From sequence record NC_006883.2: DNA of 64,000 bases, one strand, 5' to 3'. Made by a program: the position numbers and the translations under genes. Below the pieces are notes generated by a model. The model was not told the origin of the DNA and ran no database searches. It saw only the letters and a list, made by a program, of their open reading frames with translations. Positions 9,898 to 38,818 of the stretch are shown piece after piece. Position 1 is the stretch's first letter. Each line of letters opens with the position of its first letter.

Positions 9898-10578
9898 ATG
9901 AGTGATTATAATACTAGTTGTCCTTTTGGACCCCTGATATACAAAGCAAATATATCAGGGGATTTTCAAAATTTTCTTGTAGATGGTTTATCTGCTAGTA
10001 GGATGGGTGATGATGCTAGAAAACGTTTGGTTGGAAATATTGAAGGTCAACGTAGAGCTTTAAATTATGAGGAAGATAAATTTGTTAAATTTGTTGATCC
10101 TCATGTAGTGAACTATCTTGTAGAAAAGCATAAGAGACATAATGTAATAAAGGATACTTGTTCCAAACCTACTATAGAATGGAATTATGAATGTTCTAGA
10201 ATTGCATATGATTTAGATAAAGGACCTTGGATTAATTTTCAAAATTCTAATGAGTTTAATCCATTACATAATCATGCTGGTATAATTAGTGCTGTTATTT
10301 TTATAGACATACCTGAAGAAATTTCTAAAGAAAGGGAAGAATCTACATTTAACGCAAAAGTTAATGGATGTTTAGAGTTTGTTTATATGAATCAGCATAT
10401 AATACTTAATCCTGAATCTGCTACTTTACTTTTATTTCCTGCATATCTATGGCATACTGTTTATCCCTACCACAGCGATGTTGAGAGAATAACAATGTCA
10501 TTTAATGTGCATAATTTAACTATTGATGATTACCCAGTACCAGGAAATGATGACATTATTTTCTACCAAGATACTTGA
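9898..10578 (+). CDS. 2OG-Fe(II) oxygenase-like protein
   Basis: EFNPLHNH, LFPAYLWHTVYP, RITMSFN. Confidence 0.8.
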   Translation: MSDYNTSCPFGPLIYKANISGDFQNFLVDGLSASRMGDDARKRLVGNIEGQRRALNYEEDKFVKFVDPHVVNYLVEKHKRHNVIKDTCSKPTIEWNYECSRIAYDLDKGPWINFQNSNEFNPLHNHAGIISAVIFIDIPEEISKEREESTFNAKVNGCLEFVYMNQHIILNPESATLLLFPAYLWHTVYPYHSDVERITMSFNVHNLTIDDYPVPGNDDIIFYQDT

Positions 10579-10603
10579 CTAAAACCTTTTACTTTGATAT
10601 AAT
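10575..10603 (+). promoter_or_regulatory. sigma70-type early promoter
   Basis: TTGACT-N17-TATAAT. Confidence 0.75.
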
Positions 10604-10609
10604 GCAACT

Positions 10610-11272
10610 ATGAATGCTTGGGCTTTACTTTACGATGAACTTTATGGAGATGAGAAGATGACAGATGATAATAGAGTCACCCCACAAGAGAGTGATGAAT
10701 ATGATCCAAAACCAAAATCAGATGTAGAAGATTCTGATTGGAATGATCCTGTAATAAGTGCTGGAGATTCAATTAATATAGGTGGTGGTGTTGATTTCGA
10801 TTATGGTGGTTTCACTTTAAGTGATGATTATCTTGTAGGAGTTTCAACAGCATCAGCAGATACATCAGCGTATTTTGTTGATACTAGTGACTATGAGGTG
10901 ACTATTGACACCTCTAATTTTGATACTGTTACCTTTGGTGGTGAAGATTCTCCAACACCAGGAATAGAATCAAATAATCCTAGAAAATATAAAGAGGATG
11001 AAGCTATCAAAGCCCTTCAGGATTATATCTCTACCACTTATGGTGGACACTATACTTCCAAAGAAAACAATGTCCAAACACTTGATCTTATTGAATCTGT
11101 AGGAGATGCTGAATCATTCTGTAGATCTAATGCAATCAAATATCTAAGTCGCTATGATAAGAAGGGACAAGCAAAACGTGATATACTAAAAGCACTACAC
11201 TATTCACTCCTACTTTATCACTTCAGTGGGCAACTAAAAGAGACAACTACCCGTGGTTATGAAACTTTCTGA
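10610..11272 (+). CDS. hypothetical protein with C-terminal DUF3310-like domain
   Basis: GGHY...NAIKYLSRYDKKG...DILKALHY motif after an acidic N-terminus. Confidence 0.7.
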   Translation: MNAWALLYDELYGDEKMTDDNRVTPQESDEYDPKPKSDVEDSDWNDPVISAGDSINIGGGVDFDYGGFTLSDDYLVGVSTASADTSAYFVDTSDYEVTIDTSNFDTVTFGGEDSPTPGIESNNPRKYKEDEAIKALQDYISTTYGGHYTSKENNVQTLDLIESVGDAESFCRSNAIKYLSRYDKKGQAKRDILKALHYSLLLYHFSGQLKETTTRGYETF

Positions 11273-11924
11273 AAAAACTTTAACAGTTCTAAAAAACTTT
11301 GCTGGAATTAACAATTCTATTCTTGTAAAAGAAGGCAATCAACTTCGCACTATTTCTGTTGCTAAGAACATTCTAGCAGAGGCAAATATAGATGAAGAGT
11401 TTCCTAGACAATTTGGTGTATATGATTTAAATCAATTTCTTAATGGATTGAGTTTACATCAAGATCCTGATTTGGATTTTACTGAAGAATCATATCTTAA
11501 TATTCGTGAAGGTAAGCGTAGAGTAAAATACTTCTTTGCCGATCCCCAAGTTATTATTTCTCCACCAGACAAGCAGATTACTTTACCATCTGAGGATGTA
11601 CATTTTCAATTAGAGAGTAGTGCTTTGGATAAGTTACTCAAAGCAGCAGCAGTATATCAATTACCAGATCTTTGTGTTGTTGGTGAAGCAGGTGCAGTTA
11701 GACTTGTTGTTCGTGATAAAAAGAATGATACTTCAAATAGTTATTCTGTTGCTGTAGGAGAAACTGATAAGGAGTTTAGTTTCAATTTTAAGGTGGAGAA
11801 TATTAAAATTATTCCTGGTTCTTATGACGTTGTAGTATCTTCTAAGTTACTTTCCGAGTTTACTAATAGTAACTATAACTTAAAGTATTATATTGCTTTA
11901 GAACCTGATTCTACTTTTGGATAA
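11259..11924 (+). CDS. gp45: DNA polymerase sliding clamp gp45
   Basis: MKLSEKTL..LKNFAGINNSI, YDLNQFL, YYIALE. Confidence 0.95.
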   Translation: MKLSEKTLTVLKNFAGINNSILVKEGNQLRTISVAKNILAEANIDEEFPRQFGVYDLNQFLNGLSLHQDPDLDFTEESYLNIREGKRRVKYFFADPQVIISPPDKQITLPSEDVHFQLESSALDKLLKAAAVYQLPDLCVVGEAGAVRLVVRDKKNDTSNSYSVAVGETDKEFSFNFKVENIKIIPGSYDVVVSSKLLSEFTNSNYNLKYYIALEPDSTFG

Positions 11925-33940: not shown

Positions 33941-34143
33941 TGAATAATTTGATAGATCAACTCATTATTGAGTTTAAAAAATTGAAAGGAGTTAAAGGTA
34001 ATATATTTGAAAATTTTCTATCTTTTGTGCATTTATGCTTAACAGGTAACAAAGATGATAAATATAAGGTAAAGAAGACTCAAATATTAGAATATATTGT
34101 TGCCAATAGGCAATCAATTAAATCGAAATTAATACAAAACTGA
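33940..34143 (+). CDS. hypothetical protein
   Basis: 67 aa ORF coupled to both neighbours. Confidence 0.55.
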   Translation: MNNLIDQLIIEFKKLKGVKGNIFENFLSFVHLCLTGNKDDKYKVKKTQILEYIVANRQSIKSKLIQN

Positions 34144-35417
34144 TGAAATCTTTTTCGCAATTTTTAACTGAAACTACTGCTACTCAACAAGCTGCTCGTC
34201 TAGGATTAGAGGGTGATGGGCATGGTGGGTGGTATGATAGGTCTACTGGAGAGTTTGTTGCAAAAACCGAAAAGGGAAGATTAAAGTTTTATAATAAGAG
34301 ACAAAAGGTAGGTGCTCAAGATCCAGCACAATCCGAGAAAGAAAAGAATTTATCATCACCTAATACTCAGGCTCCACCTGAAGAACAACAACCAGAACAG
34401 GAAGTAGCACCTGAACAAGAGCAACAACCTTTACCTGTTCAGAGTCCTGATCTTGCTGCTGGACCTCCACCAGTTCCTAAAACTAAAGGAACATTAACAC
34501 TTGCATTTGGTAGATTTAATCCACCACACGCAGGTCATCAACAATTAATGGATATTGCTGCTGCTTCTGCTGAAGAACAGGAGAGTGATTACATTATTGT
34601 TCCTTCTCGTAGTAATGATAAAAAGAAAAATCCATTAGACGCTGATACTAAGATTTCTATGATGAGGCAGATGTTCCCTCAACATAGTGAGAGAATTATT
34701 AATGATACTGGTAATAGAACTATCTTCGATGTTTTAAAGAAAGCTCATAATGATGGGTATGCAAATGTAAGAATAGTTGCTGGTGATGATAGAGTAAAGG
34801 AATTTGATAAACTATCTCAAAATTATAATGGTACTTTATATGATTTTGAAGGATTAGAAGTTATATCTTCTGGGGAAAGAGATCCTGATTCTGATGGTGT
34901 AGAAGGTTTATCTTCATCAAGGATGAGATTGGCGGCAATGGAAGGTGATTTTAAAACTTTCCGTTCTGGTCTTCCTGAAGATGTTCCTAGAAAACAAGCA
35001 ATGACTTTGTTTGATACTGTTCGTCAGGGAATGGGTGTTGATGAAGTTAAAGAGTGTTGGAACATATGGGAAATAGCACCTAAAGATGATCCAGAAAACT
35101 TACGTGAAGCATACATTAAAAAAGAAGTTTTTGATATAGGAACTAAAGTTGAAAATGTAAATACTGGTTTAATTGGTAGAATTATTCGTAGAGGTGCGAA
35201 TCATTTGATCTGTGTAACAGAAGATAATATAATGTTTAAATCGTGGATTAAGGATGTAACCGAAGCAGTAGTAAACGGAACTACTATATCTGGTGTTTCT
35301 TCAGATAATAGACTAGTTGGTACAGATAAACATCTTAAGTATGTTGCCTCTATGGTTCCTGGAGCTACATGGGGAATAAGTTTCATAAATAAATACAAGG
35401 TAAGAAAAAAGTCGTAG
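34143..35417 (+). CDS. cytidyltransferase-like nucleotidyltransferase with N-terminal extension
   Basis: FGRFNPPHAGH (HxGH), VAGDDR, SSSRMR. Confidence 0.85.
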   Translation: MKSFSQFLTETTATQQAARLGLEGDGHGGWYDRSTGEFVAKTEKGRLKFYNKRQKVGAQDPAQSEKEKNLSSPNTQAPPEEQQPEQEVAPEQEQQPLPVQSPDLAAGPPPVPKTKGTLTLAFGRFNPPHAGHQQLMDIAAASAEEQESDYIIVPSRSNDKKKNPLDADTKISMMRQMFPQHSERIINDTGNRTIFDVLKKAHNDGYANVRIVAGDDRVKEFDKLSQNYNGTLYDFEGLEVISSGERDPDSDGVEGLSSSRMRLAAMEGDFKTFRSGLPEDVPRKQAMTLFDTVRQGMGVDEVKECWNIWEIAPKDDPENLREAYIKKEVFDIGTKVENVNTGLIGRIIRRGANHLICVTEDNIMFKSWIKDVTEAVVNGTTISGVSSDNRLVGTDKHLKYVASMVPGATWGISFINKYKVRKKS

Positions 35418-36794: not shown

Positions 36795-37037
36795 ATGAGT
36801 GAAGTTATTATTACACCTGATTATGACGGTCTATATGATGACTGGTTCGACCCCCCTATGGAGATTAAAATGAAAATGAATGAAGACATCGTGATTAACA
36901 CGACTGAAGGATTAGAAGTGGTTAATGTCCCACAATCTTTACATGAGATAGCATACGATTTTGCTACAAAAGGTATTACAACCACTATTAATACTACTGG
37001 TGGTTCAGAAGTTTTTAACGTCCCAGATGATGCTTGA
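36795..37037 (+). CDS. hypothetical protein
   Basis: 80 aa ORF. Confidence 0.55.
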   Translation: MSEVIITPDYDGLYDDWFDPPMEIKMKMNEDIVINTTEGLEVVNVPQSLHEIAYDFATKGITTTINTTGGSEVFNVPDDA

Positions 37038-37248
37038 AGAGAATAAATTTTCGGATTTTTATCATAAGGCAAGAAAAAAAGTCTTAGATAAAAAGAAAAA
37101 GAAGGAAGAAAAGAAACCTGAAAAGGCACAAGATGCTGGTGCTAGAGCACGAAGGGTATTAAAACGCAAAGAACACGCTAAGTATGTGTCTGGATCGACA
37201 GAAAACGTTCCAGATGATATACGAGACCATAAAGAATTTTATAAATAA
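37027..37248 (+). CDS. basic hypothetical protein
   Basis: Lys-rich ORF; in-frame ATG at 37027. Confidence 0.55.
   Translation: MMLEENKFSDFYHKARKKVLDKKKKKEEKKPEKAQDAGARARRVLKRKEHAKYVSGSTENVPDDIRDHKEFYK
37240..37247 (+). promoter_or_regulatory. T4-type late promoter
   Basis: TATAAATA 22 nt upstream of the aaRS-like gene. Confidence 0.65.
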
Positions 37249-37269
37249 ATTCAGTTTTGCGAAGAATTA

Positions 37270-38073
37270 ATGACAAGCCTGATTGATCCGAAAAAATATA
37301 CCAAAACACTTGACCTATTAAGGTCATTTTTTTTGTCTAAAGGTTTTTATGAAGTCCATACTCAGAACCGTTTAAGTATCCTTGCTGCATGTGAAGATCC
37401 AGAAACAGTAGCAACCTATAATTATGGTGATAATGTTTGGCCATTACCTCAAACTGGACAGATGTGGTTAGAGTATGAATTACTCAAAAACCCAGAAGCA
37501 GCAGGATTCTTCTGTTTATCTACATCCTATAGAGCAGAACCTAATCCAGTACCAGGTAGGCATGAAACTATCTTCCCTATGTTTGAGTTTGAAATGCACG
37601 GTGGTGTAGAAGAACTTGAAAAGATGGAAGTTGAATTGTGCGAACATCTTGGGATACCCTTAGATCAAGAGAATATCCTTTCTTATGATGATTGGGGTAA
37701 TATGTTTAATGCAAAAGAACTTGAGCATGAACATGAAGAGAAGATTGGTCGTGGTATGATTACTAAGTTCCCTGAGTGGACATCACCATTTTGGAATATG
37801 GCAAGATACGATGATGGTGTAACCAGTAAGAAGATTGATGTTATATTAAATGGTATGGAAACTATTGGTAGTGCAGAACGCAGCACTGATAAGAAACAGA
37901 TGCGTGATACATTCCATACTATTTCTGATGGTGAATATGCTAATTTACTTTACAAATTATTTGGTAAGGAAAGAGTAGAAGCAGAACTTGAAGAGTTTCT
38001 TGACTTTGACTTCTTTCCTAGAAGTGGAGGAGGAATCGGTGTAACACGTATCATGCAAGCAATCCCTGATTAG
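37270..38073 (+). CDS. class II aaRS catalytic-domain protein (AsnRS/AS-AR-like, no anticodon-binding domain)
   Basis: Motif 1 FFLSKGFYEVHT, motif 2 SYRAE..GRHETIFPMFEFE, motif 3 SGGGIGVTR; only 267 aa. Confidence 0.85.
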   Translation: MTSLIDPKKYTKTLDLLRSFFLSKGFYEVHTQNRLSILAACEDPETVATYNYGDNVWPLPQTGQMWLEYELLKNPEAAGFFCLSTSYRAEPNPVPGRHETIFPMFEFEMHGGVEELEKMEVELCEHLGIPLDQENILSYDDWGNMFNAKELEHEHEEKIGRGMITKFPEWTSPFWNMARYDDGVTSKKIDVILNGMETIGSAERSTDKKQMRDTFHTISDGEYANLLYKLFGKERVEAELEEFLDFDFFPRSGGGIGVTRIMQAIPD

Positions 38074-38082
38074 GGATTCCTT

Positions 38083-38168
38083 TGTGAGGTGACGAAATTG
38101 GTAAACGTGTCAGTCTGTTTAACTGATGTTCCTGGCGGGACTTGAAGGTTCGACTCCTTCCCTCACAG
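38083..38168 (+). tRNA. tRNA-Asn(GTT) with long variable arm
   Basis: Acceptor TGTGAGG/CCTCACA plus G73; D loop TGG; anticodon stem TCAGT/ACTGA with loop CTGTTTA; 17 nt variable region; T arm GAAGG-TTCGACT-CCTTC; no encoded CCA. Confidence 0.85.
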
Positions 38169-38203
38169 TTTAGATTACTATATAGTTCAGTTGCGTTTAG
38201 CAA

Positions 38204-38818
38204 ATGACTTGTACAGGAACACTCCCAAAAGAGGTAGTTCTCGAAGCACTTCGGTGTTGTAGGGACGTCTACCCACATGAGCAAGATTATTTGGTTAGTA
38301 GGAAAGTTGCAGGACATACTATTCTTGCAGTAGAAGGTACGAATGAAACTACTGATTGGATTACTAATCTTAAGTTCTTAATTAAGAGGGATGATTGTCA
38401 TAGGGGATTTAAAAATAATGCTAATAGAACATTAGCACAATTAGTAGTTGCCTATGAAGGATTAAATCCAGAAAGAAAACTTGTTATTGCAGGTCATTCA
38501 CTTGGTGGTGCTACTGCCACATTAATAGCAGATCTCCTTTGGGAATCTGGTAATACAAATATTGCACTTATTACTGCTGGTTCTCCGAGACCAGGAGGAA
38601 GAAGATTGAAAAGGAGGATTAAGGATCTTGAACACTACAGGTTTGTACACGGTAATGATATTGTTCCAACGACTCCTCCATGGCTTGCTGGATACGTTCA
38701 TACTCATCCAGTTACTAAACTTGAGGATGCAAACGACACAAGATTTGATGGGGTCGCAGATCATAACATGGGCGACTACTATGACGCAGCAGTAAAACAC
38801 TACGAAAATCACGAGTAA
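38204..38818 (+). CDS. lipase class 3 (alpha/beta hydrolase)
   Basis: VEGT..DW, GFK, GHSLGG nucleophile elbow, DIVP, DH. Confidence 0.88.
   Translation: MTCTGTLPKEVVLEALRCCRDVYPHEQDYLVSRKVAGHTILAVEGTNETTDWITNLKFLIKRDDCHRGFKNNANRTLAQLVVAYEGLNPERKLVIAGHSLGGATATLIADLLWESGNTNIALITAGSPRPGGRRLKRRIKDLEHYRFVHGNDIVPTTPPWLAGYVHTHPVTKLEDANDTRFDGVADHNMGDYYDAAVKHYENHE

What the first reader, a model, noticed from the sequence alone, without database searches (positions are those of the whole stretch)
37240..38168. Anticodon-domain-less AsnRS-like enzyme co-transcribed with an atypical tRNA-Asn: candidate dedicated phage enzyme/tRNA pair
Seen: a late promoter (TATAAATA, 37240) precedes a 267 aa class II aaRS core with motifs 1-3 and no N-terminal OB-fold anticodon-binding domain. 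Its stop is followed by a 9 nt gap and then a tRNA with the Asn anticodon. Known: canonical AsnRS needs the OB domain to read GUU; archaeal AS-AR is a similarly truncated AsnRS paralog that makes free Asn; SerRS (class II) recognises the long variable arm rather than the anticodon. Inference: the enzyme may act on this unusual tRNA through its variable arm (aminoacylation, or tRNA-linked amidation of Asp), forming a private late-infection module. Alternatively it is a free-amino-acid Asn synthetase that feeds the tRNA.
Basis: partly seen in the sequence, partly recalled or inferred. Interest (0 to 1): 0.88.

Follow-up and report, generated by a model that had tools for sequence, protein, structure and literature searches.

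The report
Phage synthetase-like enzyme with private tRNA
Cyanophage P-SSM2 carries a late-expressed cassette of a truncated asparaginyl-tRNA-synthetase-like enzyme and an odd long-armed tRNA-Asn that are never found apart, yet the enzyme's relatives in bacteria and giant viruses work without that tRNA and sit with pyrimidine (UMP) synthesis genes, so it is more likely a metabolic enzyme than the tRNA's private charging enzyme.

Summary
The window is Prochlorococcus phage P-SSM2. ORF 37270-38073 is a 267-aa class II synthetase core with no anticodon-binding domain. Nine nt downstream lies a genuine 86-nt tRNA(GUU) with a long variable arm, and a conserved late-promoter motif lies upstream. GenBank already lists both as "tRNA ligase" and "tRNA-Asn".

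New here:
- Gene and tRNA form an inseparable cassette: 75/75 gene-anchored and 99/99 tRNA-anchored loci, in several genomic contexts.
- The tRNA keeps the bacterial tRNA-Asn marks (GUU, G73, invariant U1-A72). It also has invariant U37, variable position 33 and an always-present extra arm.
- The enzyme family is not viral-only and not tRNA-bound. At least 379 bacterial loci, giant viruses and jumbo phages carry it with identical catalytic motifs and no such tRNA.
- The family is repeatedly fused to, or in an operon with, PyrD, PyrE and PyrF.
- Among about 460 cyanophage records, only P-SSM2, P-SSM5 and P-SSM7 have the cassette, and only they have pyrE.
- The tRNA-linked clade is derived and shows no gain of tRNA-binding features.

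Best reading (about 0.45): a tRNA-independent Asp/Asn-type ligase feeding UMP synthesis, co-transcribed with a host-charged tRNA-Asn. A dedicated charging pair (about 0.17) is not excluded.

The parts
37240..37247 (+). Late-promoter-like motif TATAAATA (T4-like/cyanophage late type). It marks the left boundary of the conserved cassette.
   Evidence: Read. A TAAATA core lies at -26..-30 in 71/71 distinct upstream regions of homologs, against 2/71 in the control region. Sequence 5' of it is unrelated between loci. Homology with P-SSM7 starts at 37237. Function as a promoter is inferred, not shown.
37248..37269 (+). Conserved 5' leader (…CAGTTTNNC…AAAATA ATG).
   Evidence: Conserved in the alignment of upstream regions across loci with different neighbours.
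37270..38073 (+). 267-aa standalone class II (subclass IIb, AsnRS/AspRS-type) catalytic core with no anticodon-binding domain. It is annotated 'tRNA ligase' and belongs to PHROG 29758 (unknown function).
37387..37401 (+). ACEDP (res 40-44). It aligns with the AsnRS/AspRS 'EGG' segment. By recalled AspRS/AsnRS structures, that glutamate contacts the substrate alpha-amino group.
   Evidence: Alignment to AsnRS. A39, A40, C41, E42 and P44 are invariant in alignment A5, and the whole motif is conserved across contexts. The role is inferred by homology.
37447..37473 (+). PQTGQMWLE (res 60-68). This is the AsnRS-type version of the QSPQ amino-acid-binding motif, with Leu-Glu where AspRS has the aspartate-binding Lys.
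37519..37596 (+). Class II motif 2 (res 84-109, STSYRAEPNPVPGRHETIFPMFEFEM). It has the invariant Arg88 and an AsnRS-type E-x-E.
37831..37884 (+). KIDVILNGMETIGSAERS (res 188-205). This is the metal-binding Glu and side-chain-binding Arg segment of subclass IIb enzymes.
   Evidence: The roles are inferred by homology.
38017..38055 (+). Class II motif 3 (res 250-262, PRSGGGIGVTRIM), with invariant Arg260.
38083..38168 (+). 86-nt tRNA with anticodon GUU. It has U1-A72, discriminator G73, a 3-bp D stem and a long variable arm. No CCA is encoded.
   Evidence: Scores: Rfam tRNA 52.5 bits, ARAGORN, clade-specific covariance model 94.3 bits. All 20 stem pairs are paired in 78-79 of 79 distinct variants with many compensatory changes, while pair 1-72 is invariant U-A.
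38115..38121 (+). Anticodon loop CUGUUUA, with anticodon GUU at 38117-38119 and U37 at 38120.
   Evidence: Across 79 variants the loop reads Y32, N33 (U 65, C 10, A 4), G34, U35, U36, U37, A/C38. GUUU is invariant in the unbiased gene-anchored set.
38127..38143 (+). Variable region UGUUCCUGGCGGGACUU: 1 nt, then a 5-bp hairpin, then UU.
   Evidence: In the 79 cyanophage-type variants the region is 12-29 nt and nearly always folds as a hairpin of about 3-10 bp. The divergent marine partners have arms of up to about 35 nt. Sequence and length are not conserved.

Best explanation
This is a late-transcribed two-gene cassette (promoter motif, enzyme, tRNA) that moves and is kept as one unit in marine T4-like phages.

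The enzyme belongs to a widespread, uncharacterised family of standalone AsnRS/AspRS-type class II cores. It most likely works without tRNA. It would adenylate an aspartate- or asparagine-type carboxylate with ATP and form an amide bond, which is asparagine-synthetase-A-type chemistry.

Comparative genomics places this step immediately upstream of PyrD, PyrE and PyrF. The product is therefore probably dihydroorotate or its direct precursor. One candidate route is ATP-driven ring closure of N-carbamoyl-aspartate. Another is closure of an Asp/Asn adduct.

In P-SSM2 the enzyme would act with the phage's own pyrE to raise UMP supply for DNA synthesis.

The tRNA is a real tRNA carrying the bacterial tRNA-Asn identity marks. 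It is most likely charged by host enzymes: a non-discriminating AspRS plus GatCAB, or AsnRS. It would be released from the common late transcript by ordinary tRNA processing.

Shown: the anatomy, the conservation, the linkage, the family distribution, and the Pyr fusions and operons. Inferred: the chemistry, the substrate, late transcription, and who charges the tRNA.
For: Family is tRNA-independent and cellular as well as viral.
- At least 379 loci in bacterial and archaeal assemblies carry it, at 56-68% identity to the phage protein. They include Patescibacteria, Rickettsiales, Dependentiae, Bacteroidota and Pasteurellaceae. Seven of the 80 loci held are marine contigs that carry the partner tRNA.
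- It also occurs in giant viruses and jumbo phages.
- The clade-specific tRNA model finds the partner tRNA in none of these except 7 marine contigs closest to the phage.

Link to PyrD, PyrE and PyrF.
- Two independent fusions exist: DHO_dh-core (P0124, seen on 7 contigs) and core-OMPdecase (P0157).
- In a giant-virus MAG the core gene is followed by a PyrE-PyrF-PyrD triple fusion whose PyrE and PyrD parts pass NCBIfam cutoffs.
- A conserved core-PyrF-PRTase-DHOdh operon occurs in Alphaproteobacteria and Pasteurellaceae. There PyrF passes the TIGR01740 cutoff, and Phocoenobacter has a canonical quinone PyrD adjacent.
- Of 80 genome-collection loci, 22 have at least one of the three genes within 2.5 kb, and 14 have all three.
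- A DHOdh-like gene also lies next to core+tRNA cassettes in L244 and L235.

Phyletic pattern in cyanophages.
- Among 464 Synechococcus, Prochlorococcus or 'Cyanophage' records that carry g23, the cassette occurs only in P-SSM2, P-SSM5 and P-SSM7. Cyanophage-type pyrE occurs only in those same isolates.
- P-SSM4, P-SSM3 and P-RSM3, which infect the same hosts, have neither.
- The pyrE gene of P-SSM2 is reported in PMC1079782.

Same activity expected in phage and bacteria.
- All catalytic motifs are identical across the tRNA-linked, Pyr-operon, Patescibacteria and giant-virus members.
- The tRNA-linked clade is a derived, well-supported subclade (99/95).
- It has gained two basic positions and lost three, and its net charge is about -19.

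The tRNA fits host routes.
- It has anticodon GUU, G73 and an invariant U1-A72.
- U1-A72 is conserved in bacterial tRNA-Asn and is the GatCAB identity element (PMC1635274).
Against: - The absolute co-inheritance of gene and tRNA, across 60-100% protein identity and many genomic contexts, is stronger than co-expression convenience predicts. This reading leaves it unexplained.
- An AsnRS-type pocket next to an Asn anticodon would be partly coincidence.
- Most genome-collection members, mainly Patescibacteria, have no pyr gene within 8 kb. There the neighbours are Dus and DnaX.
- Most viral loci also show no pyr neighbours.
- P-SSM2 has pyrE, 116 kb away, but no detectable phage pyrD or pyrF.
- No biochemical datum exists, and no paper on such an activity was found.
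- U37 and the non-conserved position 33 are odd for an ordinary decoding tRNA.
Confidence: 0.45

Rival explanations
1. Dedicated charging pair. The OB-less core aminoacylates this tRNA with Asn or Asp. It would read the acceptor end (U1-A72, G73) and tolerate or use the extra arm. The arm would keep full-length host AspRS/AsnRS off the tRNA.
For: - Linkage is perfect in both directions: 75/75, 99/99 and 7/7.
- The cassette is preserved in several genomic contexts.
- U1-A72 and G73 are invariant while the other acceptor pairs covary.
- The extra arm is always present although its sequence is free.
- The pocket is AsnRS-like and all adenylation motifs are intact.
- From general knowledge, class II enzymes approach the tRNA from the variable-loop side, so a long arm could clash with an N-terminal domain.
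Against: - The family predates the tRNA and lacks it elsewhere.
- There is no clade-specific change at the active site or surface, and the protein is very acidic.
- The enzyme has no anticodon-binding domain, yet GUUU in the anticodon loop is invariant. That points to another reader of the anticodon.
- The Pyr fusions and operons are unexplained by this reading.
Confidence: 0.17
2. Free asparagine synthetase plus decoder. The core is an ammonia-dependent Asn synthetase, convergent with archaeal AS-AR and AsnA. It supplies Asn for the AT-rich, Asn-rich late proteome, and the tRNA adds AAC/AAU decoding capacity.
For: - The architecture matches AS-AR: an AsnRS-type core without an anticodon domain. 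The family profile hits AS-AR 3p8t at E 2e-6.
- One homolog is named 'asparagine synthetase A' by a source, an automatic name.
- The family is common in Patescibacteria and other reduced genomes without pyr neighbours.
- Streamlined parasites are known to keep a lone AsnA (PMC12174568).
- This reading gives a thematic match with the Asn anticodon.
Against: - The family is closer to true AsnRS (1e-14) and archaeal-type AspRS (4e-13) than to AS-AR, and it has no match to AsnA.
- It does not explain two independent fusions and the conserved operons with PyrD, PyrE and PyrF.
- From memory, unverified here: marine picocyanobacteria may lack AsnRS. If so, free Asn could not be loaded on tRNA.
Confidence: 0.2
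3. The tRNA is not mainly a decoder. One version: it is a cofactor on which host ND-AspRS and GatCAB convert Asp to Asn for the enzyme. Another version: it is a nuclease-resistant substitute or decoy for host tRNA-Asn during anticodon-nuclease defence.
For: - The positions kept are exactly those read by AspRS/AsnRS (GUU, G73) and by GatCAB (U1-A72).
- The positions important for ribosomal decoding are odd: U37 is invariant and position 33 is U, C or A.
- From general knowledge, phage tRNAs with altered anticodon loops are known to evade anticodon nucleases.
Against: No direct evidence. The canonical T loop, D loop and tertiary-pair nucleotides fit an ordinary tRNA. A decoy role does not explain the linkage to the enzyme.
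Confidence: 0.1

Closest known systems
Archaeal asparagine synthetase AS-AR (Pyrococcus 'AsnRS2', PDB 3P8T/1NNH) and bacterial AsnA
   Same: A standalone class II subclass IIb catalytic core of about 270-330 aa with no anticodon-binding domain. Adenylation motifs are intact. These are the precedent for tRNA-independent amide formation on aspartate.
   Different: Not the same clade. The family profile scores AS-AR at E 2e-6 but AsnRS at 1e-14, and AsnA not at all. AS-AR and AsnA are not known to be linked to PyrD/E/F or to a tRNA gene. The activity of this family is untested.
Canonical AsnRS and archaeal/eukaryotic-type AspRS
   Same: Best sequence and fold matches. The substrate-pocket motifs are AsnRS-type.
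   Different: It lacks the OB-fold anticodon-binding domain and hinge. NCBIfam asnS and aspS scores (16-25 bits) lie far below the cutoffs of 343-414. The motif 1 proline is absent.
Other synthetase-derived paralogs: EpmA/PoxA (LysRS core that modifies EF-P) and HisZ (HisRS core that regulates a phosphoribosyltransferase)
   Same: A truncated class II core recruited to a non-translational job. HisZ is a precedent for a synthetase paralog working with a PRPP-using enzyme of nucleotide-type metabolism.
   Different: Similarity to EpmA is weak (E 1e-4; NCBIfam 17.8 bits against a cutoff of 264). Catalytic residues are conserved here, unlike in HisZ.
Bacterial tRNA-Asn
   Same: Anticodon GUU, discriminator G73, U1-A72, and no extra D-loop nucleotide 20A.
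   Different: A long variable arm (class II architecture with a 3-bp D stem), U37 instead of A37 (the usual t6A site, from general knowledge), and a non-conserved position 33.
Gene-adjacent dedicated synthetase/tRNA pairs (PylRS with tRNA-Pyl; SepRS or SerRS with long-arm tRNAs)
   Same: Tight physical pairing of a class II enzyme gene with an atypical tRNA gene. The recognition idea does not depend on an anticodon-binding domain.
   Different: No evidence here that the enzyme touches the tRNA. The enzyme family mostly lacks the tRNA.

Membership tests
Class II aminoacyl-tRNA synthetase catalytic domain, subclass IIb (PF00152) | Sequence match above the curated threshold, and the antiparallel-sheet fold with motifs 2 and 3 | tested here: met
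   Pfam 48.7 bits against a cutoff of 25. Model pLDDT 96. Foldseek E 2e-17 to AsnRS 1x54. The motif 2 and motif 3 arginines are present.
Class II aminoacyl-tRNA synthetase catalytic domain, subclass IIb (PF00152) | Motif 1 with the invariant proline (dimer interface) | tested here: not met
   HTQNRL aligns to AsnRS APPTLV, with Gln in place of Pro. This holds across the whole family.
Canonical asparaginyl-tRNA synthetase (AsnRS) | N-terminal OB-fold anticodon-binding domain | tested here: not met
   The protein starts at the equivalent of AsnRS residue ~140. Upstream ORFs are unrelated and differ between loci.
Canonical asparaginyl-tRNA synthetase (AsnRS) | Equivalog-level sequence membership | tested here: not met
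   TIGR00457 17.6 bits against a cutoff of 342.6; PRK03932 15.9 bits against 414.
Canonical asparaginyl-tRNA synthetase (AsnRS) | Asn-type amino-acid pocket (S/T-G-Q…L-E, and E-x-E in motif 2) | tested here: met
   QTGQMWLE and FEFE aligned to QSSQLYLE and VEAE of Brugia AsnRS. AspRS has QSPQLYKQ and IDSE at these sites.
Canonical asparaginyl-tRNA synthetase (AsnRS) | Esterification of tRNA-Asn with Asn | not testable with these tools
   Needs an aminoacylation assay.
Asparagine synthetase A type (AsnA / archaeal AS-AR) | Standalone class II core without a tRNA-binding domain | tested here: met
Asparagine synthetase A type (AsnA / archaeal AS-AR) | Sequence membership in the AsnA or AS-AR clade | tested here: not met
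   No AsnA hit in PDB or NCBIfam. AS-AR scores only E 2e-6, weaker than AsnRS and AspRS.
Asparagine synthetase A type (AsnA / archaeal AS-AR) | Asp + NH3 + ATP to Asn activity (beta-carboxylate activation) | not testable with these tools
   Needs an enzyme assay or complementation.
EpmA/PoxA (EF-P lysine ligase) | Equivalog-level sequence membership | tested here: not met
   PRK09350 17.8 bits against a cutoff of 264; TIGR00462 11.3 bits against 286.9.
PyrD/PyrE/PyrF-associated module (proposed here) | Adjacency or fusion to pyrD, pyrE or pyrF in the same locus | tested here: not met
   In P-SSM2 the neighbours are hypothetical genes and a lipase. The feature is met for relatives.
PyrD/PyrE/PyrF-associated module (proposed here) | Co-occurrence with a pyr late-step gene in the same genome | tested here: met
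   pyrE lies at 44.9 kb of P-SSM2 and the cassette at 161.2 kb. Among cyanophage isolates, the same three carry both (PMC1079782).
Bacterial tRNA-Asn | Anticodon GUU, discriminator G73, U1-A72 | tested here: met
   The rule comes from PMC1635274.
Bacterial tRNA-Asn | Class I body (4-5 nt variable loop), purine 37, U33 | tested here: not met
   The variable region is 12-29 nt in the 79 cyanophage-type variants and longer in the divergent marine partners. U37 is invariant. Position 33 is U, C or A.
Class II (long-arm) tRNAs Ser/Leu/Tyr | Long variable arm and 3-bp D stem | tested here: met
Class II (long-arm) tRNAs Ser/Leu/Tyr | Anticodon of Ser, Leu or Tyr | tested here: not met
   GUU in every copy.

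The most novel reading that the evidence does not exclude
The family is a one-enzyme route to dihydroorotate. It would replace carbamoyl-phosphate synthetase, aspartate transcarbamoylase and dihydroorotase in front of PyrD, PyrE and PyrF. In marine phages it would have acquired a private long-arm tRNA(GUU) as substrate or cofactor. Either the core esterifies that tRNA, or the Asn/Asp it consumes is made on that tRNA by the host's ND-AspRS and GatCAB. That would be a tRNA-coupled step of nucleotide synthesis.
Probability: 0.1. Interest if true: 0.95.

Novelty: new variant of a known kind. Interest (0 to 1): 0.74.

Why it matters
Synthetase-derived paralogs such as AsnA, AS-AR, EpmA and HisZ are textbook cases of enzyme recruitment. 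This would be a further, very widespread family whose function is unassigned: thousands of marine phage variants, at least 379 loci in the bacterial and archaeal genome collection, and giant viruses.

If it feeds PyrD, PyrE and PyrF, it would explain orphan late-pyrimidine genes in reduced bacteria and viruses. It would also add a new auxiliary metabolic step to cyanophage takeover of nucleotide supply in the most abundant phototroph.

Separately, the tRNA is unusual in its own right. It is long-armed, has U37, carries Asn-type identity marks, is under strong purifying selection, and is never separated from the enzyme. It is a clean, testable case of either a natural orthogonal pair or a tRNA kept for a reason other than plain decoding.

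Tried and rejected
- Single-sequence structure prediction gave pLDDT 38.6 and was discarded for the MSA-based model.
- Alignment-based locus searches with 61 and 12 divergent members failed because no stretch was conserved enough. Single proteins and a 6-member alignment were used instead.
- ARAGORN missed copies with very long arms (L023, L068, L235, L236) and miscalled others (L024 as undetermined, L302 as 'tRNA-Asp atc'). They were recovered by eye and with a covariance model.
- Reading the tRNA as a Ser-type tRNA (from memory its acceptor resembles E. coli tRNA-Ser GCU) was not pursued. No host tRNAs were at hand, and U1-A72 with GUU fits tRNA-Asn.
- A quadruplet or shifted anticodon was rejected. 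The loop is always 7 nt.
- The sigma-70 promoter and terminator scan found nothing useful around the cassette. It found only a hairpin plus T-run inside the ORF.
- TATAAATA as a stand-alone signal is not over-represented.
- Neighbour censuses of 19 viral loci showed heterogeneous virus core genes and no common partner.
- Ten literature searches found no study of this gene, this tRNA or an ATP-dependent dihydroorotate-forming enzyme.
- Whether Prochlorococcus lacks AsnRS, AsnA and AsnB could not be established with the tools or papers at hand. My recollection that it uses ND-AspRS plus GatCAB is unverified.
- A residue-level comparison with AS-AR could not be made because its sequence could not be fetched.
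Full report
IDENTITY OF THE WINDOW. Positions 37000-38400 are 100% identical to Prochlorococcus phage P-SSM2 (AY939844.2, 161000-162400). They are 99.9% identical to P-SSM5 and 81% identical, over 37237-38172 only, to P-SSM7. GenBank annotates the ORF as 'tRNA ligase' and, in GU071092, P-SSM5 and P-SSM7, the downstream element as 'tRNA-Asn'. PHROGs files the protein in phrog_29758, function unknown. At annotation level the pair is therefore known. I found no functional study in ten literature searches.

CHECK OF THE OBSERVATION: THE ORF. ORF 37270-38073 encodes 267 aa and matches Pfam tRNA-synt_2 at E 7e-13. A profile of 67 family members hits AsnRS (2xti, E 1e-14) and archaeal/eukaryotic-type AspRS (3nel, 4e-13). 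It hits AS-AR (3p8t) at 2e-6 and LysRS/EpmA at about 1e-4. It does not hit AsnA. The alignment begins at residue ~140 of the 437-aa AsnRS, so the OB-fold domain is absent. The MSA-based AlphaFold model is confident (pLDDT 96) and superposes on AsnRS/AspRS catalytic domains. Motifs 2 and 3 are intact. Motif 1 lacks its invariant proline. The substrate-pocket motifs are of the AsnRS type rather than the AspRS type.

CHECK OF THE OBSERVATION: THE tRNA AND PROMOTER MOTIF. Nine nt after the stop codon lies an 86-nt tRNA (38083-38168). It scores 52.5 bits against Rfam tRNA (E 6e-10) and has anticodon GUU, U1-A72, G73, a 3-bp D stem and a 17-nt variable region with a 5-bp stem. TATAAATA at 37240 is not significant as a bare octamer, with 6 found against 9.9 expected. 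But a (TA/C)TAAATA motif sits 26-30 nt before the ATG in 71/71 distinct homologous loci whose further-upstream sequences are unrelated. A cassette-borne late promoter is a reasonable inference.

THE PAIR IS A UNIT. Of 80 IMG/VR loci encoding proteins 77-98% identical, every one with downstream sequence carries the tRNA 11-94 nt after the stop. ARAGORN found 73, and the two apparent misses contain it with longer arms. Conversely, of 115 matches to a degenerate tRNA pattern in IMG/VR, 99 have the gene just upstream, 13 lack upstream sequence and 3 are chance matches. The cassette occurs next to g23 and gp3, as in P-SSM7. It also occurs in the P-SSM2 context and in at least 40 loci with neither context. 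Homology between P-SSM2 and P-SSM7 begins at the promoter motif and ends at the tRNA.

THE tRNA IS UNDER SELECTION AS A tRNA BUT IS ODD. In 79 distinct variants, all 20 cloverleaf pairs are paired in 78-79 sequences, with up to six pair types per position. Pair 1-72 is always U-A and position 73 is always G. The D and T loops carry the canonical G18 G19 and T-Psi-C-type nucleotides. The variable region ranges from 12 to 29 nt. It nearly always folds as a hairpin flanked by one 5' nucleotide and usually two 3' nucleotides, with free sequence. More divergent marine partners have arms of up to about 35 nt and encode CCA. The anticodon loop is Y32, N33, G34, U35, U36, U37, A/C38. U37 is invariant and position 33 is U in 65, C in 10 and A in 4 variants. 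GUU, G73 and U1-A72 are the marks of bacterial tRNA-Asn. U1-A72 is the GatCAB determinant (PMC1635274). U37 and a variable position 33 are not expected of a normal decoder.

THE ENZYME FAMILY IS MUCH WIDER THAN THE PAIR.
- An exhaustive search of 1.8 billion cluster representatives gives 668 clusters at E<=1e-3 and 169 at E<=1e-30.
- Members occur in jumbo phages (LR756501 and LR756508, 45-50% identity).
- They occur in giant-virus MAGs and contigs with NCLDV capsid, PolB and capping-enzyme neighbours.
- Unexpectedly, at least 379 loci of the bacterial/archaeal genome collection carry the family at 56-68% identity. These are Saccharibacteria and other Patescibacteria, Rickettsiales, Dependentiae, Saprospiraceae/Chitinophagales and Pasteurellaceae.
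- NCBI names the Phocoenobacter atlanticus protein 'amino acid--tRNA ligase-related protein'. The P. uteri protein is named 'asparagine synthetase A', an automatic name.

THE PARTNER tRNA IS CONFINED TO ONE CLADE. A covariance model of the partner tRNA scores 79-94 bits on true partners and at most 60 bits on ordinary tRNAs. It finds the partner only in 7 marine contigs closest to the phage, always just after the gene. It finds none in the other 73 genome-collection loci or in 28 giant-virus and jumbo-phage loci. In a maximum-likelihood tree the tRNA-linked genes form one well-supported clade of 12 (99/95), plus one long unresolved branch (L244). They are nested among tRNA-less bacterial and viral lineages. 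The tRNA is therefore a late addition to an older, tRNA-independent enzyme.

WHAT THE FAMILY KEEPS COMPANY WITH.
- Two independent fusions join the core to pyrimidine enzymes. One is DHO_dh-core (P0124, on 7 contigs, next to an OMPdecase gene). The other is core-OMPdecase (P0157, next to PRTase and DHO_dh genes).
- In a 116-kb giant-virus MAG the core gene is followed directly by a PyrE-PyrF-PyrD triple fusion. Adenylosuccinate synthetase and lyase lie upstream.
- In Alphaproteobacteria/Rickettsiales and Pasteurellaceae the order core, PyrF, small PRTase, DHOdh is conserved. PyrF passes the TIGR01740 cutoff, and Phocoenobacter has a canonical quinone PyrD alongside at 445 bits.
- Overall 22 of 80 genome-collection loci have at least one of the three genes within 2.5 kb, and 14 have all three. 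Three genes out of a genome would give about 1% by chance (my estimate).
- Two marine core+tRNA cassettes also have a DHOdh-like gene beside them (L244, L235).
- Among 464 Synechococcus, Prochlorococcus or 'Cyanophage' records with g23, the cassette occurs only in P-SSM2, P-SSM5 and P-SSM7. Cyanophage-type pyrE occurs in exactly these isolates, plus fragmentary uncultured viruses. Close relatives on the same hosts (P-SSM4, P-SSM3, P-RSM3) have neither.
- The original genome paper lists pyrE and purH/L/M/N as P-SSM2 peculiarities (PMC1079782).

COUNTER-EVIDENCE ON CONTEXT. Patescibacteria members sit between Dus and DnaX with no pyr gene within 8 kb. Most viral loci show no common neighbour.

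SAME ENZYME EVERYWHERE. All conserved blocks are virtually identical in tRNA-linked, Pyr-operon, Patescibacteria and giant-virus members. These blocks are RLSILAACEDP, WPLPQTGQMWLE, STSYRxEPNPxPGRHxxIFPMFEFE, SPFWNM, KxDVIxxGxETIGSAERS and PRxGGGIGxTR. Positions that distinguish the tRNA-linked clade are a handful of hydrophobic swaps. Basic residues were gained at two positions and lost at three. The clade's mean net charge is -19 against -11 for the rest. Nothing suggests that the phage proteins acquired tRNA binding.

INTERPRETATION OF THE ENZYME. The shown facts favour a tRNA-independent ligase that adenylates an Asp/Asn-type substrate. The Pyr fusions and operons place it just before PyrD. 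I therefore propose that it forms dihydroorotate or an immediate precursor. The route could be ATP-driven amide closure on N-carbamoyl-aspartate, an intramolecular version of the asparagine-synthetase-A reaction. It could also proceed from an Asp/Asn adduct. This chemistry is inference only. A plain ammonia-dependent asparagine synthetase remains a serious alternative. It fits the Patescibacteria distribution and the Asn theme but not the Pyr links.

INTERPRETATION OF THE tRNA. The tRNA most simply serves as a late tRNA-Asn charged through host enzymes that read GUU, G73 and U1-A72. This leaves two things unexplained: the absolute co-inheritance of enzyme and tRNA, and the odd anticodon loop. 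For that reason I keep the dedicated-pair reading at about 0.17 and a cofactor or decoy reading at about 0.1. Whether the host lacks AsnRS and free-Asn synthesis could not be verified here, and it matters for choosing among these.

VERDICT. The object is a new, uncharacterised variant within the known kind 'synthetase-derived paralog', paired with a new variant of tRNA-Asn. Interest is high because the family is very widespread, its function is open and cheaply testable, and the tRNA association is unusually strict.

Noticed in passing
window 34143-35417 (+): A 424-aa ORF with an HxGH-type nucleotidyltransferase motif (GRFNPPHAGH) after a Pro/Gln/Glu-rich N-terminus. It is annotated only as a conserved hypothetical protein.
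   Followed up: no
window 37311-37326 (+): A terminator-like hairpin (6 bp, 3 GC) followed by T8 lies inside the 5' end of the enzyme ORF (codons ~15-22). It could be a chance feature or an attenuator.
   Followed up: no
window 37270 vs GU071092 annotation (L004:3064): One GenBank record starts the CDS 63 nt downstream of ATG 37270. Homologs align from residue 1, and the conserved leader and promoter motif precede 37270, so the longer ORF is the better call.
   Followed up: partly
window 38204-38818 (+): A class-3 lipase-like ORF (GHSLGG) lies directly after the cassette. In the uncultured viruses AG-341-P01 and AG-345-O18, homology to P-SSM2 starts exactly after the tRNA end, which marks the right cassette boundary.
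   Followed up: partly
L283, L311, L268, L265 (Patescibacteria/Saccharibacteria loci): Synteny is conserved as Dus (tRNA dihydrouridine synthase), class II core, (NUDIX or desaturase), DnaX, tRNA-Gln. No pyr genes lie nearby. The family's role in these minimal bacteria is open.
   Followed up: partly
L302:6097-7287 and 10237-11424 (335-kb marine contig): A class I/II aminotransferase and a PEP carboxykinase flank a core+tRNA cassette. This hints at oxaloacetate-to-aspartate supply.
   Followed up: no
P0181, P0189, P0224 (family members from metagenomes): These members have lost the motif 2 Arg/His and the motif 3 glycine-arginine residues. They may be inactive paralogs kept for a non-catalytic role.
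   Followed up: no
L085:1599-4515; L089:2822-4021; L210: Adenylosuccinate synthetase-like genes (and a PurB-like lyase in L085) lie near the core gene in giant-virus-like contigs. This is another aspartate-consuming nucleotide step.
   Followed up: no
L235, L236, L237, L244, L302 (just downstream of the core gene): The more divergent marine partner tRNAs encode the 3' CCA and have arms of up to about 35 nt. The cyanophage copies encode no CCA.
   Followed up: partly
L243:9514-9915, L243:9893-10672 and equivalents: The PRTase (134 aa) and DHOdh-like (229-260 aa) genes of the alphaproteobacterial operons are much shorter than canonical PyrE and PyrD and score below the equivalog cutoffs. They may act on a non-standard substrate.
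   Followed up: partly
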